Part shown: positions 51,412 through 59,230 of the stretch, one piece after another
Position numbering within the stretch: the stretch's first letter is position 1
How the letters are laid out: each line of letters starts with the position of its first letter
Assembly (NCBI GenBank): GCA_907165135.1
Contig: OU015567.1
Coordinates: 7,502,001-7,566,000, forward strand
From: Oikopleura dioica
Taxonomy: Eukaryota; Animalia; Chordata
Length of the DNA stretch: 64,000 nt
Direction: 5' to 3'
Notes under the pieces: generated by a model
What the model was told of the DNA's origin: nothing
Databases searched by the model: none
Seen by the model: the letters and a program-made list of their open reading frames with translations, nothing else
Position numbers and translations under genes: made by a program

Positions 51412-54319
51412 CTACCCCAAACTTCGGTCCCAGCCAGAGTTTTCCGTCGGCACAGGTTTGCCATCAACAGTTTTCTGTTCCAAACGAAGCTCATTCAAGC
51501 GTTTGCAATTTAGATCGCATTGAACTTCTCCGGGCTCGACTTTTATCTGATTAGGGATGAGAAAGGCACTCGAATACTCGAAACTCGAATAAATGATCAA
51601 AAACATTATTTCTCATCCCAAAAGCGGACCCGATATTCTCTGGTCTAAAACGGCATTCCAGTCGATTTCTTTGAACCATTTATGTTTTCGAATTCCGTCG
51701 ATTCCATTACTCTGGTACCCGAGACGACTTGTCGGAGATCTTTTACAGAGTGATTTTATCAACGATGTTCCTGCTTCGGAAATCTCGCGACGAATGCCCG
51801 TCTTAGAACATTGGAAAACGAAAGGTGCAAGGTCGATTCCGGAGACGATTCTGTCTTGAATTCCCTATAATCCCAGTTGAATATGTAGAGAGAAGGTACG
51901 TAGAGTACCTTGGCGGTAGAATCTCTGAAAGGAGTTGAGCAGCTCAACATCTCATAAATGACGACTCCAAGAGACCAATAATCAACAGCAATGTCATGAC
52001 CGTTGTTTAGAATGATTTCTGGGGCGATGTATTCAGGAGTGCCACAGAAGGTCCATGTTTTTTCTTCGACAATTTTGGCCATTCCGAAATCAACTAGAGA
52101 ATTAATCTATCATTTCCTCTTGATAAAGAATGATAATACCGAGGACTAAATGTCCATTTTCATGGTTGATCATCAAGTTTTCCGGCTTCAGATCTCTATG
52201 GCAAATATTTTTCAAATGAAGATATTCAAGAGCAAGCGTGATATCAGCAGCGTAGTATTTTCCGACGATTTCATCAAGAGGACCTCTTGCCACAAGGAGA
52301 TCGAAAAGCGAACCGCCCAGGTAAGCGTCTGTGAGAAAATATACAAAATGGAGATCTTTGAATGTGGTGTAAAGTTTGGAGATGAATTTGCAGTGGAGAG
52401 AGCTCAAAATGTCCTTAGAACACAGTTAGTTTTGAATGATCTGGTTGTCTTACTCTTTCTCGTAGAATGTATTTTTCTTGGTGATTCTTAACTATCGTAT
52501 ATTTTGGAATCATCTTCAGCGCTAAATGAATCGACTTGGTTTCAGGGGTCGATACAAGATGCACGGTTCCGTAACCTCCTTTGCCCAGGCGCTTTATGAC
52601 AACCATTTCTGCCAGCTTGAAGTGCGATGCAATTTGTTTGTTGTAAACATCGTTTACAATCGTCAACGAAAGAACTCGCTCACGAGCTGGTGAATTTGCT
52701 CGGTGGCGTTCGATTGAACCGATCAAATTCACAAAAAGAGCTTTTTAGTGGTTAAATACTGAAATCAACGAGGAGTACCCACACGAAATGAGGCACGATA
52801 AAACCATTTCCTTTGTTCAAAACATAACACGTGACGTCTGTTGCTGCCACAACGTCGGCGTTTCTGTTCGTGTTGGAGAGCAGTGAAATGTCTCCAAAGT
52901 ATTTGAACTGCTCCAGAGTCGCCAGATATTCGCCATTACTTTTAGAGGGCCTTTTCATTACTTTCTTCCCTTTCGAGTTAAATCCTCGCAGAGTGACTGT
53001 AAGATGCACCTGCAGTATCGAACCGGCATTTATGATGTGGCGGCGGATCAAACTGCCTTGTGGAGAGATGCCCTTTCCTGCTCACCTTGACGGAGCCAGA
53101 TTTGATCACATAAAAGGAGTGCCCGATGTCGCCCTGGCGGATGATCTGACTGCCTTCAGCGAAGAACTGCTCGCTTAGAATAATAAAACAGTGTTTGTTG
53201 ATCTTTCTTACCTCAAGCAAGCGGCCACTTTCTTCTGTTCCAACTTCGAAAACGTCTCAAAGTGGGTAATTTTGGAGACGTATTCGATCTTTTCTTGGAG
53301 ACTAGCTGTTCCTATCGTTGCCAGAACTCGCTTGAAGTCATGTCTCTAATATGGATTTTTATGAGCCTCCTGGACTTGAAGATTAAAGAAAGCAAAAACC
53401 ATAACTTGATGTACCAGACGGTCATTTTTGTCTTCGCTCTGACCGAAGCTGTTCTCGCGCAGTTGTAAAACACGGCAATTTCTCCAAAAAGATCTCCAGG
53501 TTTCAATACTTTTTCAGCTTGGCGGATTCCTCCTAGGCTTCCGAACATTTCCATCCCAATAGGCTTCAGAACAGCGGCGAGTCCCTCCTTGATGATGAAC
53601 ATTTCGTCCTTTTTCTTCGCGTTAGCATCGATAATCAGCGTATTCTCCTCGATCGTCTTTTCCTGGAATGCGTCGATCACAGCGTCCATCTGGGCCTTTG
53701 AGAGAGTTTCGTTAAATTTGAGAAGTTATAGAATCATATCCTGTTTGAGCACCTGATTCAGCTGAATTCGACCAACTCATAAATGTCATGGAACACTTGT
53801 TCCACGCAAATATGACAATATCGGCGTATATTTTGAAAGATCGGTTTGAACTTACTTTCGACAGTTTTTTCATGACAATGTCGTTTTTCAAGGCGAGACG
53901 TATTTGCACGATATCGCTTTCTGATTTATTGACAATATGGCGCGGAGATTCAATGGGACCTAAGATGTTAAATGTAAGTCATCGAAACCACCAGCTTCCG
54001 CCGCGCTACTGCAAAATCTGCGATATCAAGACGCAAACTACTGCGAGAATTTTTCACTAAAAAGTTTACCTGAGCCGCGTTCTCCGTAAATTGGGTTTCG
54101 GATTGTTTCATTTTGATCTCGATTCCCGGATTGAATAGCTTTCTTTATGGACAAGGCATTTCCATTCTTGAGTTCTTGGTTTTCGTCCTTTAGTTTTTTC
54201 ACACTCGACTCCAAGTTTTCGATTATTGTTTTGATGTTTTCCAGCGACGATTTTAGTTCTTTGCTTTTTTCAGGAAAGACCACCCCTAGTTTCTCTAAAA
54301 ACTCTTCCAGTACTTCCAT
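51412..54319 (-). CDS. cGMP-dependent protein kinase (PKG)
   Basis: N-terminal coiled coil, two cNMP domains ([16 protein letters not shown]; [16 protein letters not shown]), [33 protein letters not shown]-terminal NSGWD. Confidence 0.93.
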
Positions 54320-55617
54320 TCTGGACGCTGGAGATGGTTATCTTCCTTGATTTCAGCTCTGTTTTTCTTTTCTGTTATCTAAAAATTATAAAATTTTTAA
54401 CAGAAAGGACGATATTTTCCGGGCAGCACGCTATGCAAACAACGTTTGGATAGAGTTAGAATTTGCGAAGGCTAAATCAAATGTTGAACAAGGGGTCACG
54501 CACGAGTCACATTTTTCTTTCATTTCTCTTTTTTAAATTTCAATTTTGAACTTTCTCAACAAAATTTGCGCCTGATTTGACTATTTCTTTTCATTTATAC
54601 ACGGATCAATTGTTCTCTCGCCTTATGACAGTTCTCTCCGTCTCAGTTGATGATTCTCTGTTTAGTTCTCTTTTATTTTTATATTGTTAATTCTGAGACA
54701 CCGTTTTTGGGAATCTCTGGTTCAGATATAAAAGGAGATATTTTCGTACGATGACGTAGTTGAGCATCTGTGCATCAATTATGGAATAAATGACGAGGAT
54801 TTATTGCGTGCTTTTGCTCGTTACGACAAATTACTAATGTCATGATTTTTATTTTTTACAAAAAAAAAATATCAAAAAAGCCGTCAATTATCAAAAAGGT
54901 TCGTTTTTACCCAGATTCTCCCAGATTTTACCTCTATGTATATTTTCTTAATGATAGCTGAGTCCGAGTTCTCGTCATCTTAGTAATAATTTTTAATGAG
55001 ACGTCTCTCTTTTCAAGAAAGAGGATTAGAGACAGGTTGAAGGGAGGGGAATACTTTATGGACAGAATAATCTTGTTGCCCTGAGGTGAAACGAAACTAA
55101 ATGGCGGAGAGTCGGCAGATTCAATTCCGAAGACGTGAGATTTATTCAGACAGGGCATGATTTTAAATCACAAGGGTTTACAGTCAGGCTTGTAAATTGA
55201 GAGCTTGAAATTCGAGGAAAATTTCAAACTGGTCTTCAGAAGAGATGATAAACCTTTCGAGAAAGCCATTTTTTTATCATACTGCGGATATTTTATTTTT
55301 GTCCTTGAAAGTATTTCAACCACGTGTAAGTAAGTACCTGTAACTTAGAGCGGTAGGATTCACATCCGCCAAGACATTATAAATTGTCCAAAAATGCAAA
55401 AAAAAATCTTGCGCTGCCAAAGATTGACACGGAGATGGTTTAGCCAGTGTCAATTCTTGCAAGCATCAATCAAGACTGGCTCATTTGGCAGCTGATCTAT
55501 ACACGACAATTCAACTCTCAAGTCCTTTTTAAGACACTCGTTTAATTTACAATAGAAACGGCATTTTTTCTAAGAAGATTGTACAGTGCGTTATTTTGAC
55601 AGTAGATCCTTTCGTGT

Positions 55618-56002
55618 TTATAAGACGAATTCGCGGAAGGCGTCGAGGTGCTCTTTTAGGCTCTCGATATCTTCGTCTCCTTCTGGCCAGATGATTCGAA
55701 GAGGAGCACAAATTGGACATTCGGGCTTGGAGCAAGAAAGGCAATGTCTCAGGTACTTTCTTGAAGCGTCACATGCCGCGACTCCGAACTGAAAAAATGA
55801 TTATAGCTGAAATTTAAATCAAGGAAGAGAATTACTCTCAAATTGCATTTTTTCTCGAAGCACTCCTCTTGATGACAAAGCAGATCCTAAAAAGGGACGT
55901 TTGAGTCATGAAATGCAAAAGGAAAGAGCTCACTTGGAAATCCAGGCAGTATGGCATCAGAGCACACTCTTCGTCATCGCAATCAACACAGTGGATCATC
56001 AT
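55618..56002 (-). CDS. Stand-alone TAZ-type zinc-finger protein (~96 aa, 3 exons)
   Basis: Exons 55934-56002, 55836-55886 and 55618-55788, joined by two 47-nt GT-AG introns, give MMIHCVDCDDEECALMPYC..HQEECFEKKCNLRFGVAAC..RHCLSCSKPECPICAPL, three HCCC sites. Extra 5' exons are possible. Confidence 0.75.
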
Positions 56003-57883
56003 TGAAATTACCTGTCAACGGGTGAAATCAGAAAATTACGACCAAAAGCACAATTATCGCTCATCTCTCTTTATCATCTTTTTTAGAATATTTTCAGAGA
56101 AAAAGATGTTTTTTTTTTTCAAATTTTTTTTTGACTAAAATGGCTAATATTGAGAAAATTAACAAAAAAAAATTTCAATTATCTTCGGTTAAAAAGTCTA
56201 GTGAAAAATCTTTCTGTTCGTAATTAGTTTTTATAAAAAATATTTTTTTTCTTTTCGAATTAACCCGTTTCCTTTCTGATACCAGCGTACTTGTCAGCTT
56301 TTGCGTTTTTCATCTCTGTGACATTCATTTTTTTTAATGAAGTTAACTTTGTTTGTTTGCGCTCGTTTGATGAGTTTTGCGTTTGGAATTCAAGGCCTCG
56401 CCTTGATGAAAGAGGTATTTATTCATCAGTGCAAGGGCGGCCACTAGCGATTCTAGTAACAAGTGATAAAGACTGTCCAAAAGTGTCAAAGTGAGTCACG
56501 CTCGTCAAACAGTAACATCTGTACATTTCCCATCTGGTGTATAAATCTAAAACACGTCCTCTATCAACCACAGTGATTCATTTTCACTGCACGTACCGTG
56601 GTATATGAGAAAGTTACAAACCGCGACGTTCGATTTTTCCCATTTTTACCTTTTTTCGGCGATTTTTTTTCTTTAGTTTTTTTCGTAGAAACGTTGTTAA
56701 ACTCGCTCTAGAGCAACTTTAATACTTTGGCCTATTTACTATATTCAAGCCCTAATCTAGCCATAAGTCCTTCTAATTGCCGATCAACTATTCCTCAAAA
56801 ATGCGCTGCTCATACTCGTCTCACTTGCGCAACTCCGAAGACCGCGGAACAATCTTGGGCGACAGGCCATTTTTTCAAAGTTTAGCATGTTGATGAAATA
56901 ATCATAAAAATCATAAGACTCACGTTGTTGTGAGTCTCTTTGATTTACTCTTGATAATAACAACCGCATCAAAAAGCAACAGCAAATGTTGTTTGGTTTT
57001 CGAGCATGGTCGATTTCTTCTTACCCACCGGTCATAGAAATATTTTTCTAAGTACAACTCGTCTCAGTGACATTTCTATCATTCTATTTTATGCGGTAGA
57101 AAGATTTGAGCGAAAGCCCGATTCTCTCGCTAGAATTTTTTGATAAAAATCTGAACGAGTAATTATGGCTTGTAAGAATATGGAAAAACTACTGGTAGCA
57201 GTGATAAGAAAATGTGAATAATGTAGCGATTCGTGTAGTCGAAGAAATTGATAATTACTTTTCACGTGGAACTTTTTTCTTAACAGAAAAACAAGGAAGA
57301 ATACGCTAAAAGAAAAAGTTATGCTGAAATAAAAATCGCAATAGGTTAAGTCGTTCAAATTAAGCAGACGAGAAATGAGCTTTTCTCTTTTGCGTTTACG
57401 TTTTTCAAAGTTGATAAGTCGCTAACCTGCTTACACCGTGGAATGGGTTGAGCTGGGCAGCTGAATAAAATGCCGATCATTATCCTCGAAATTCGGAAGG
57501 CAAATAAACCCCCTCACGCGGTCCTTGCTTCCATCATTATTTTTTTTTCCTCCCCAAATTGAAATTTGCCATTTTTCATTCTTCCTCGACTTTATCGTAA
57601 AAAATACGGCGGTGACTTAACATGCCTCGAGTTGACTTTGAATCAGAAGGAAAGAATCAAAATCGAATCTCGGTGGCGAATTTTGTATCATTACATTTTG
57701 CGATCACATTACTACTTCGAGGACACCTGCGATGCCACACGTATCCTCATCACTTGCTTCTTCGAGTTTTAATCCCTATCCTTAAGGCCTTCACCTCATC
57801 TACTACTTCTTGTCTGTGTAATTCTAGCTTCAATATTCAGATTTTGGAATCAAAATATTTCGCTAGCAATATAGTCTTGTAAT

Positions 57884-58078
57884 CTGGGCCGGCAACCTGA
57901 GTAGAAAACCTGAGTCAGGGTCTGAAAGATCAAAACTGAAAAGCGGCTTCGTCAGAAGTATAAAATATGATTGAATCATAATCTTGGGAAGCCGCTTCGC
58001 GGCTTCGTTTTTTAAAAAGCCGCTACGCGGCTTTTCATTTTTGATCCTTCAGACCCTGACTCAGGTTGCCGAGCCCAG
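57884..58078. mobile_element. 195-bp MITE with ~50-bp TIRs and internal palindromes
   Basis: ctgggccggcaacctgagt...cagggtctgaaagatcaaaa versus ttttgatccttcagaccctgactcaggttgccgagcccag; flanks cttgtaat / tttgcaat may be a decayed 8-bp TSD. Confidence 0.75.
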
Positions 58079-59230
58079 TTTGCAATTGCAAAACAGCAAT
58101 TGAGAGACCTTGTCTTGCCTATGCGAATATTCGCTAATTCGCCGACTTCATAAAAAGTTGCATCACAAAAATTCCCCTTATTCCGGCGCTGTTATAAACG
58201 TGCGCGATGAGAGGTAAATCCCCCTCCGCCCAGGTCTATTTGTGATTTAAGAATTCAGCGCGATAGATCATCCTCGAGCTTCTCTTCATGATGCAAATTT
58301 GAAATTTCGCATCTTCAGCAAAGCCAGCGAAATGAGTCAAACAAGTTCTATCAAAATAGTATTAAAATATTATTAGCCAAAAATGATTTTAACTTACCTT
58401 GATCTAACGTTTATTTCGGGACAATTTAACCATGAAACGCAGTTTAACAAATTCAATTAAAAAAATCATTACAAATGCAGTAACGCAATAATCCATTTGT
58501 CAGCCAAAGCAGTTAGTAAGGTAAAGTGAGGAGATGATCTGAAAAATTCATATCTGGGAAATGCCGGTAATGAACGGAAAGAACGAGAAATCGTCCGGAT
58601 CAAGGGGATATTTACGCTCTCTTCAATAATTGCGAGTGAAAGAAAAATTTCTTGCGCAAATGTTCAAGGGCTCATTCAAGAGCAGAATAGTTCGAGTACC
58701 AACGCACAGACGATAAAGGCAGCCTTTTGTTGACATGTGAATGTTGACATGTGAATGTGTCATGTTCCTGTCATCATAAATCAACTCGTAAAATTTCCTT
58801 TTGGCTGCTCTTGGTTCAATAAATATTGTTAAATTTAAATTCTGAGAGGAAAAAAAGAAGCCTTCTGAAAGGCCATTTTGAGGCGTTTTTAGGTAAGTTT
58901 AGGTCGGTAGATCTGGCTGAATAATTGAGCACTTGGTTCGGCTCCCATACTCAAGATAAATATTTCTGAAATAATTATCCGCTCCACTTGTCACTGGCAC
59001 TAAAGTTATCAATCGCGCCAGGCGGCTTTCTGAAGCCTCGTGAACACATCGTAATATTTTGCCTCTTGCTATTTTTTTGCTTTTTGTCTGGATAAAGATT
59101 AAGAGTATCCCCACTTATAGTTGACTAGAGGGCACAACGTCACTATTTTGAGTGTTTGAACGAGGAAAAAAATCCACAGAAAACAGCTTTTTATTTTTAA
59201 CGAGCCGTTTTGCGTGTTTTTTATTCAATT

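What the first reader, a model, noticed from the sequence alone, without database searches (positions are those of the whole stretch)
55618..56011. Hidden stand-alone TAZ zinc-finger microprotein
Seen: three small exons separated by two 47-nt GT-AG introns encode H-x3-C-x4-C-x5-C, H-x3-C-x4-C-x8-C and H-x3-C-x4-C-x2-C, ending RHCLSCSKPECPICAPL. The CBP TAZ1 end is SHWKNCTRHDCPVCLPL. A 25-aa acidic/helical tail and a stop follow. Knowledge: in animals TAZ domains are known essentially as parts of CBP/p300, where they bind the activation domains of HIF-1a, p53 and CITED2. Inference: a free TAZ could act as a decoy or adaptor for transactivation domains, or be a piece of a fragmented CBP. The ORF track misses it completely.
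Basis: partly seen in the sequence, partly recalled or inferred. Interest (0 to 1): 0.72.

Follow-up and report, generated by a model that had tools for sequence, protein, structure and literature searches.

The report
Small free-standing TAZ1 zinc-finger gene
This is a real, expressed and strongly conserved 118-residue Oikopleura gene that is little more than one CBP/p300-type TAZ1 zinc-finger domain plus an acidic tail; public genome annotations already list it, but nobody has studied what it does.

Summary
The three exons, the two 47-nt GT-AG introns, the three His-Cys3 motifs, the acidic tail and the stop are all at the stated coordinates.

- **Missing exon.** The model lacks one 5' coding exon (56328-56272, 19 codons). 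RNA reads of a sister lineage join it to the acceptor at 56013/56012. In the window this intron is 260 nt and GA-AG. The acceptor is therefore a cis-splice site, not a spliced-leader site.
- **Already annotated.** The true product has 118 residues and is identical to public Oikopleura dioica protein CAG5111799.1 (OKI2018_I69 chr2.g6072). It is 86% identical to E4WQ51, which UniProt labels "TAZ-type domain-containing protein". It is not hidden.
- **TAZ membership.** The full protein passes Pfam zf-TAZ (33.3 bits, cut-off 25, whole profile). All 12 zinc ligands are present. The predicted fold matches CBP/p300 TAZ1 (Z 8-10) better than TAZ2 (Z 4-7).
- **Selection and spread.** dN/dS is about 0.05. 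Orthologues occur in at least four further marine, probably appendicularian, taxa.
- **Differences from CBP TAZ1.** The core is acidic (net -2 against +3 to +13). A conserved 25-residue acidic tail is predicted to form a fifth helix.
- **Function.** Untested. The likeliest role is a free peptide-docking module linked to p300.

Small TAZ-only proteins also exist in other animals. Interest is moderate.

The parts
56272..56328 (-). Coding exon 0. ATG at 56328-56326, 19 codons (MNVTEMKNAKADKYAGIRK). It forms the first part of helix 1.
   Evidence: Conserved against L001/L003 with synonymous-type changes. RNA reads carry its orthologous sequence joined to the acceptor at 56013/12. P0006 residues 1-19 map here at 100%. 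The in-frame stop lies 31 codons upstream with no ATG between.
56012..56271 (-). Intron 0, 260 nt, phase 0. It is GA-AG in the window and GC-AG and shorter in L001/L003.
   Evidence: The junction is deduced from loose ends at 56013 in 13/31/50 reads and from the public 118-aa protein. The sequence diverges and changes length between lineages. GA-AG introns are frequent in O. dioica (PMC7072748).
55934..56011 (-). Exon 1, 26 codons (VISMM IHCVDCDDEECALMPYCLDFQ). It holds the end of helix 1 and zinc site 1 (H26, C30, C35, C41).
   Evidence: Reads show wobble changes at 56009 and 56003, so the VIS codons are coding.
55887..55933 (-). Intron 1, 47 nt, GT-AG, phase 0.
   Evidence: Loose ends at 55933 in 13/36/66 reads continue with exon-2 sequence. 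A minority retain the intron (0/7/13 reads in X5/X6/X7). It is 42 nt and 47% identical in L001/L003.
55836..55886 (-). Exon 2, 17 codons (DLLCHQEECFEKKCNLR). It holds the first three ligands of zinc site 2 (H50, C54, C59).
55789..55835 (-). Intron 2, 47 nt, GT-AG, phase 0. It is the only intron whose position is shared with the distant orthologue L006.
   Evidence: In L006 a 271-nt GT-AG intron sits at the same codon.
55621..55788 (-). Exon 3, 56 codons. It holds the last ligand of site 2 (C68), zinc site 3 (H77, C81, C86, C89), helix 4 and the conserved 25-residue acidic tail (residues 94-118, predicted helix 5).
55618..55620 (-). Stop codon TAA.
   Evidence: The stop is at the same place in L001, L003 and L006.
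55534..55617 (-). 3' UTR with a conserved block and an AAUUAAA poly(A)-signal-like site (about 55547-55541). The site reads AAUAAA in L001.
   Evidence: Alignment. An X1 transcript contig covers 55540-55763. The function of the conserved block is inferred only.

Best explanation
**Shown.** Window 56328..55618 (minus strand) is a four-exon gene of Oikopleura dioica. It encodes a 118-residue protein that is essentially one TAZ1-type zinc-finger domain. The protein has a long first helix, three His-Cys3 zinc sites and a fourth helix. A conserved 25-residue acidic tail follows and is predicted to form a fifth helix. No KIX, bromodomain or acetyltransferase part is attached. The orthologue in a sister lineage is transcribed and spliced, and the gene is under strong purifying selection.

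**Inferred.** Like the TAZ1 domain of CBP/p300, it most likely works as a zinc-stabilised helical docking module that clamps short disordered segments of other nuclear proteins. Because it has no enzyme part, it would act stoichiometrically. It would either compete with p300 for partners or bridge partners.

Its core is acidic rather than basic, so its partner set probably differs from the acidic activation domains that CBP TAZ1 binds. The conserved tail ends in a hydrophobic-x-x-hydrophobic-hydrophobic pattern (AF-x-E/D-F-I/V-L). It is most likely either an extra structural helix covering one face of the domain or a second interface.
For: **Gene model.**
- Exon translations were read exon by exon.
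- The public protein P0006 (CAG5111799.1) maps at 100% onto four exons.
- RNA reads join exon 0 to exon 1 and exon 1 to exon 2.

**TAZ identity.**
- Pfam PF02135 scores 33.3 bits against a cut-off of 25, over profile positions 2-72 of 72.
- By PDB sequence search, TAZ1 scores E 8e-6 and TAZ2 E 0.013.
- All 12 zinc ligands align with 20 other TAZ domains.
- AlphaFold2 mean pLDDT is 85.1 for this protein and 89.9 for a distant orthologue.
- VIA-align Z is 8.2-10.3 to six TAZ1 structures and 4.2-6.7 to TAZ2 structures.

**Selection.**
- dN/dS is 0.03-0.06, with dS of 1.4-1.9 between window and L001/L003. Introns are only 47-67% identical.
- Orthologues occur in further marine taxa and keep the tail.

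**Stand-alone status.**
- An in-frame stop lies upstream.
- Two annotations give 118 aa.
- The transcript-derived P0007 reads straight through the genomic 5' flank.

**Charge.** The core has net charge -2, the tail -6, and the pI is 5.0. Other TAZ cores have +3 to +13, apart from three non-CBP-type hits at 0 to +1.
Against: - No binding, localisation or zinc data exist.
- The acidic core departs from the electropositive surface that established structural work on CBP/p300 TAZ1 links to binding of acidic activation domains. A p300-like ligand set is therefore doubtful.
- The RNA reads come from a sister lineage (85-90% identity), not from the window's own strain. The GA-AG junction in this strain rests on the public annotation and on homology.
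- The position of the fifth helix is known only from predicted models and alignment ranges. Coordinates could not be inspected.
- Z scores of 8-10 for a small helical domain would not be decisive on their own.
Confidence: 0.5

Rival explanations
1. Repurposed scaffold. The TAZ1 fold is kept only as a zinc-stabilised helical frame. The protein has left the coactivator world. With its acidic surface and acidic tail it binds basic partners, such as histone tails, basic regions of DNA- or RNA-binding proteins, or nuclear-import factors.
For: The core has net charge -2 against +3 to +13 in other TAZ domains, apart from three at 0 to +1. The tail is -5 to -7 and the pI is 5.0 in all orthologues. The zinc-site loops are remodelled: site 1 is shortened to C-x4-C and site 2 is lengthened by four residues.
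Against: Residues that define the TAZ1 helical core and ligand-facing helices remain recognisable (LL-H, P-x-C, S-R/K, CP-x-C-x-PL-R/K). No positive evidence exists for any basic partner.
Confidence: 0.25
2. Split coactivator. O. dioica p300 has lost its own TAZ1, and this gene supplies the domain in trans, so that it is a piece of a fragmented CBP/p300.
For: It is closest to TAZ1 by sequence and by predicted fold. O. dioica genes are often rearranged.
Against: The gene lies about 5.4 Mb from the p300 locus reported in that note. Its charge and loop lengths differ strongly from CBP TAZ1. It has a tail of its own and nothing that would tether it to p300. The domain content of O. dioica p300 could not be examined here.
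Confidence: 0.08
3. Not a free gene. It would then be the last exons of a larger CBP-like gene, a decaying pseudogene copy of a CBP exon block, or a chance cysteine pattern.
Against: The acceptor is fed by a 19-codon exon that begins with a conserved ATG. An in-frame stop lies upstream. Public models give 118 aa. dN/dS is about 0.05. Pfam E is 7e-8. The orthologue is expressed.
Confidence: 0.02

Closest known systems
TAZ1 (CH1) domain of CBP/p300 (Pfam PF02135; PDB 1U2N, 1L8C, 1R8U, 7LVS, 7QGS)
   Same: It has three His-Cys3 zinc sites in the same order, including the diagnostic third site H-x3-C-x4-C-x2-C followed by PL(K/R). The four-helix topology is of the TAZ1 kind: Z 8.2-10.3 with rmsd 2.6-4.7 over 84-93 residues. 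Sequence identity is 24-33%.
   Different: It is free-standing at 118 aa, not part of a protein of about 2,400 aa with KIX, bromodomain and HAT parts. The core is acidic rather than strongly basic. The site-1 loop is shortened and the site-2 loop is lengthened by four residues. It has an extra conserved acidic tail with a predicted fifth helix.
TAZ2 (CH3) domain of CBP/p300
   Same: It belongs to the same Pfam family and has the same three-zinc helical architecture. In the structural alignments the TAZ2 matches run on into the tail helix of the model (model ranges reach 114-118 and 128-133). The extra helix may therefore lie where helix 4 of TAZ2 lies. This is inferred from alignment ranges only.
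   Different: Scores are weaker: sequence E 0.013 against 8e-6, and Z 4.2-6.7 against 8.2-10.3. The spacing of the third zinc site is of the TAZ1 type.
Small TAZ-only proteins of other animals (ESM Atlas clusters of 88-142 aa, commonest in Nematoda and Arthropoda).
   Same: They are short proteins that consist of little more than one TAZ domain.
   Different: No close sequence relation: only appendicularian-like sequences score above 60% identity, and everything else is at or below 40%. The acidic tail was seen only in the Oikopleura-type family. Some of those clusters may be gene fragments.
Plant BTB-TAZ (BT) proteins and protist multi-domain TAZ proteins
   Same: They show that the TAZ domain is used outside CBP/p300.
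   Different: There the TAZ domain is fused to BTB, Rep-A_N, bromodomain-PHD or KIX modules. Here it stands alone.

Membership tests
TAZ zinc finger (Pfam PF02135) | Profile match above the curated gathering score over the whole domain | tested here: met
   P0006, identical to the four exon translations, scores 33.3 bits against a cut-off of 25, E 6.8e-8, profile 2-72/72. Exon 3 alone scores 18.8 bits, below the cut-off.
TAZ zinc finger (Pfam PF02135) | Three His-Cys3 zinc sites (12 ligands) in register | tested here: met
   H26/C30/C35/C41, H50/C54/C59/C68 and H77/C81/C86/C89 align with the ligands of 20 other TAZ domains. They are kept in all orthologues.
TAZ zinc finger (Pfam PF02135) | Four-helix fold wrapped around the zinc sites | tested here: met
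   This is a prediction only. pLDDT is 85 and 90. The best PDB matches are all TAZ1 and then TAZ2 chains, and nothing else scores above Z 3.6.
TAZ zinc finger (Pfam PF02135) | Binds three zinc ions | not testable with these tools
   This needs recombinant protein and metal analysis.
TAZ1 subtype (as opposed to TAZ2) | Third site H-x3-C-x4-C-x2-C and TAZ1 orientation of helix 4 | tested here: met
   The spacing can be read directly. TAZ1 scores E 8e-6 and Z 8.2-10.3, against TAZ2 E 0.013 and Z 4.2-6.7.
TAZ1 as receptor of acidic activation domains (works-like test) | Strongly electropositive domain | tested here: not met
   The core has net charge -2 (orthologues -2 to -3). A CBP-type TAZ1 (P0036) has +9, and the other TAZ domains aligned mostly +3 to +13. 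The whole-protein pI is 5.0.
CBP/p300 coactivator | KIX, bromodomain, HAT_KAT11, ZZ and a second TAZ in one polypeptide | tested here: not met
   Only zf-TAZ is found in the 118-aa protein. No upstream coding region extends beyond a 19-codon exon.
   The loose ends at 56013 in 13/31/50 reads are exon-0 coding sequence (..KNDKYSGIRK), not a leader. The 5' end of exon 0 itself was not resolved.

The most novel reading that the evidence does not exclude
The family is a self-liganded TAZ1. The conserved acidic tail, with its hydrophobic-x-x-hydrophobic-hydrophobic end, behaves like a built-in activation-domain peptide. It would either fold back over a ligand groove of its own domain, giving a switchable, autoinhibited competitor, or dock onto the TAZ/KIX domains of p300. 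Under the second reading, a copy of the receptor domain has evolved into a CITED-like feedback regulator of p300. Together with the two other TAZ mini-genes reported beside p300 (unchecked note), this would be an appendicularian-specific layer of coactivator control by free docking domains.
Probability: 0.15. Interest if true: 0.6.

Novelty: new member of a known kind. Interest (0 to 1): 0.36.

Why it matters
TAZ1 of CBP/p300 is a textbook hub for disordered activation domains such as HIF-1alpha, CITED2, STAT2 and p53. A chordate that keeps a free, strongly selected copy of only this domain offers a natural experiment. The copy has reversed charge and an extra conserved helix. It shows how such a hub domain can be redeployed, whether as competitor, adaptor or something new. 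It is small enough for direct NMR and binding studies.

The gene is already in public annotations with the TAZ label, and small TAZ-only proteins exist in other animals.

The locus is also a clean example of a GA-AG intron and of intron gain or loss between appendicularian lineages.

Tried and rejected
1. **Pfam on exon 1 alone (23 aa).** No hit. The sequence is too short to say anything.
2. **Exon 3 alone.** zf-TAZ scored below the gathering score. This was superseded by the public full-length protein.
3. **First homologue search with exon 3.** It returned only prokaryote-style ORF calls on metagenome contigs, made of intron read-through plus exon 3. The length window hid the 118-aa protein. 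It was recovered by querying P0003 with a region.
4. **Spliced-leader 5' end at 56011.** Rejected by the reads.
5. **A GT donor at 56264/63 ("G|GTTAA") for intron 0.** Rejected, because it gives the wrong phase and the reads place the junction after AAG at 56272.
6. **Rfam on 54500-58500.** Only sub-threshold chance hits appeared, including C/D-box models lying over exon 1 at 18-21 bits against cut-offs of 40-45.
7. **RNA structure for the conserved upstream block 56740-56870.** One compensatory pair out of 33, so there is no support.
8. **Looking for O. dioica p300 among the distant hits.** The long hits are bromodomain-PHD-TAZ proteins of a diatom-like type. The TAZ-KIX hits could not be assigned to Oikopleura. 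This line was abandoned.
9. **Literature.** No paper mentions this protein or its accessions, nor TAZ domains in Oikopleura.
10. **Typed joined translation.** P0006 was used instead.

Full report
**Observation**

On the minus strand the window reads as follows.
- ATG at 56002 opens 23 codons that end at 55934.
- A 47-nt GT-AG intron spans 55933-55887.
- Seventeen codons follow (55886-55836).
- A second 47-nt GT-AG intron spans 55835-55789.
- Fifty-six codons follow (55788-55621), then TAA at 55620-55618.

The ORF list is not wholly blind to the gene. A 54-aa ORF (55838-56002) holds exon 1 plus intron read-through.

**Handling of the spliced model**

I never sent a typed, joined peptide to any tool.
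- Exon 1 alone gives nothing in Pfam.
- Exon 3 alone gives zf-TAZ at E 0.0023 (18.8 bits, below the cut-off of 25).
- Exon 3 alone also matches CBP/p300 TAZ1 chains in the PDB at E about 0.002. Twenty-nine residues align to the end of TAZ1.

**Orthologous loci and the missing exon**

A protein search with exon 3 found ORF calls on marine metagenome contigs, made of intron read-through plus exon 3. Their contigs L001-L003 are orthologous loci of a related lineage. A PKG-like gene lies downstream on the same strand, as it does in the window.

The alignment shows conserved exons. The introns are only 47-67% identical and change length, 42-47 nt. Upstream, a further block begins with a conserved ATG (window 56328) and shows synonymous-type changes.

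**RNA evidence**

RNA reads settle the model. Three bulk oligo-dT runs carrying the same species label were laid on 55000-57600. The reads are only 85-90% like the window, so they come from a sister lineage. Their sequence matches the Bergen-type protein P0005. They support the orthologue, not this strain directly.
- At 55933, 13/36/66 reads continue with exon-2 sequence (DLLCHQEECF). Intron 1 is therefore removed. In two of the three runs a minority retain the intron (0/7/13 reads in X5/X6/X7).
- At 56013, 13/31/50 reads continue with ..KNDKYSGIRK, which is the upstream block. In frame they then read VISMMIHC.
- Wobble changes at 56009 and 56003 show that the VIS codons are coding.

The gene has a fourth, 5' exon (56328-56272, 19 codons). 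The intron between them (56271-56012, 260 nt) begins with GA in the window and with GC in L001/L003. GA-AG introns are known to be frequent in O. dioica (PMC7072748).

In contiguous DNA an in-frame stop lies 31 codons upstream of ATG 56328, with no ATG between. A transcript-derived ORF (P0007) reads straight through the genomic 5' flank. This argues for a conventional 5' UTR rather than further coding exons.

**The gene is already public**

I re-queried with the stored ORF P0003, restricted to its exon-3 part, so that proteins of 63-200 aa became candidates. This found P0005.
- P0005 is CBY20844.1 / UniRef E4WQ51, "TAZ-type domain-containing protein", Oikopleura dioica, 118 aa.
- Its cluster mate P0006 is CAG5111799.1, Oidioi.mRNA.OKI2018_I69.chr2.g6072.t1, 118 aa.
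- P0006 maps at 100% onto the four window exons.

The window is therefore Okinawa-type O. dioica, and the public model is the four-exon model derived above. From here on I used P0006 in place of a joined translation. No paper mentions the protein or its accessions.

**Membership in the TAZ family**

- P0006 scores 33.3 bits on Pfam zf-TAZ (cut-off 25) over profile positions 2-72 of 72.
- By sequence, the PDB search gives TAZ1 chains at E 8e-6 and TAZ2 chains at E 0.013.
- In an alignment with 20 other TAZ domains all twelve zinc ligands are in register.
- The Oikopleura family has a shortened site-1 loop and a four-residue insertion in site 2.
- AlphaFold2 gives mean pLDDT 85.1 for P0006. It gives 89.9 for a distant orthologue, P0078 residues 14-146.
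- Both models show four helices around the zinc sites plus a fifth helix in the tail.
- Foldseek ranks only TAZ1 and TAZ2 chains at the top.
- VIA-align gives Z 8.2-10.3 for six TAZ1 structures and 4.2-6.7 for TAZ2 structures.
- TAZ1 alignments stop before the tail helix, whereas TAZ2 alignments run into it. The fifth helix may therefore lie where helix 4 of TAZ2 lies. This rests on alignment ranges alone, and I could not inspect coordinates.

**Selection and distribution**

Summed exon by exon, dN/dS is 0.046-0.057 between window and L001/L003, where dS is 1.4-1.9. It is 0.034 between L001 and L003.

An exhaustive profile-free search of 1.84 billion representatives found 65 hits.
- Those above 60% identity are all of this family.
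- They include at least four more distant groups from Tara and other marine samples.
- In these groups exons 0-2 are contiguous in DNA, and only the intron after codon 62 is kept. L006 has a 271-nt GT-AG intron there.
- Some of them carry a short Ser/Lys-rich N-terminal extension.
- That these are appendicularians is my inference. The samples are unlabelled.

The tail is as conserved as the core. W, P, E, G, E, S, E, H, A, F, F and L are invariant in five sequences.

**Difference from CBP TAZ1**

| Measure | This family | Other TAZ domains |
|---|---|---|
| Net charge of the 80-residue core | -2 to -3 | +9 for a CBP-type TAZ1 (P0036); +3 to +13 for most others; 0 to +1 for three non-CBP-type hits |
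| Net charge of the tail | -5 to -7 | no such tail seen |
| pI of the whole protein | 5.0 | 9.1 (P0036, 132-aa CBP-type TAZ1 fragment) and 10.3 (P0033, 101-aa TAZ-only protein) |

Established structural work links the basic surface of TAZ1 to its binding of acidic activation domains. A simple decoy for the same ligands is therefore not the most natural reading.

**How it most likely works**

What is shown is a free, zinc-finger TAZ1-fold protein that is expressed (in the orthologue) and selected.

What is inferred is that it acts as a stoichiometric docking module for disordered protein segments in the p300 orbit. It would be a competitor or an adaptor, with a partner set shifted by its charge. 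The tail would be either an extra structural helix or a second interface.

I put about 0.95 on the identity of the gene and about 0.35 on this mechanism. The rivals are these.
- A scaffold repurposed for basic partners (0.25).
- A TAZ1 split off from p300 (0.08, untested).
- A fragment, pseudogene or chance pattern (0.02, largely refuted).

**Comparison and novelty**

The claim that animal TAZ domains occur essentially only in CBP/p300 is too strong.
- The ESM Atlas holds clusters of 88-142-aa TAZ-only proteins, commonest in Nematoda and Arthropoda.
- A bryozoan protein has three TAZ domains.
I could not fetch them.
- O. dioica does have a p300 (PMC5240408). Whether it keeps both TAZ domains was not testable here.

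The finding is a new, unstudied member of a known domain family, and it is already annotated. The acidic core and the conserved fifth helix are the features worth following.

**Left out**

The public protein, identical exon by exon, took its place.

Noticed in passing
window 56754-56864, 56431-56581 and 57423-57509; also 57142-57212, which is inverted in L001/L003: These non-coding blocks upstream of the TAZ gene are 74-81% identical to the sister-lineage loci, although synonymous sites are near saturation (dS 1.4-1.9). There is no Rfam match and no covariation. A few X6 RNA reads lie at 56740-56826. They may be promoter, 5' UTR or conserved non-coding elements, and remain unexplained.
   Followed up: partly
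window 56012-56271: This intron has a GA donor in the window (GA-AG) and a GC donor in L001/L003. It is 260 nt here and roughly 100 nt there. It is a clean example of donor-dinucleotide turnover at one orthologous intron.
   Followed up: partly
L006:168-780, L004 and L005 compared with window 55621-56328: In more distant orthologues exons 0-2 are one continuous exon, and only the intron after codon 62 is shared (271 nt in L006). The two 47-nt introns and the GA-AG intron are therefore specific to the O. dioica group (gain), or were lost elsewhere.
   Followed up: partly
window about 53000-54531, minus strand: A cGMP-dependent-protein-kinase-like gene (cNMP_binding and Pkinase hits in the L001 counterpart) lies downstream on the same strand. 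The synteny with the TAZ gene is conserved in L001. Whether the two form an operon was not examined.
   Followed up: no
window 55534-55580: A conserved 3' UTR block sits just upstream of, and includes, an AAUUAAA/AAUAAA site. It is more conserved than the introns.
   Followed up: no
P0017 (Watersipora subatra XP_067942658.1): This 411-aa bryozoan protein has three TAZ domains and no other CBP part. It is another non-CBP use of the TAZ domain in animals.
   Followed up: no
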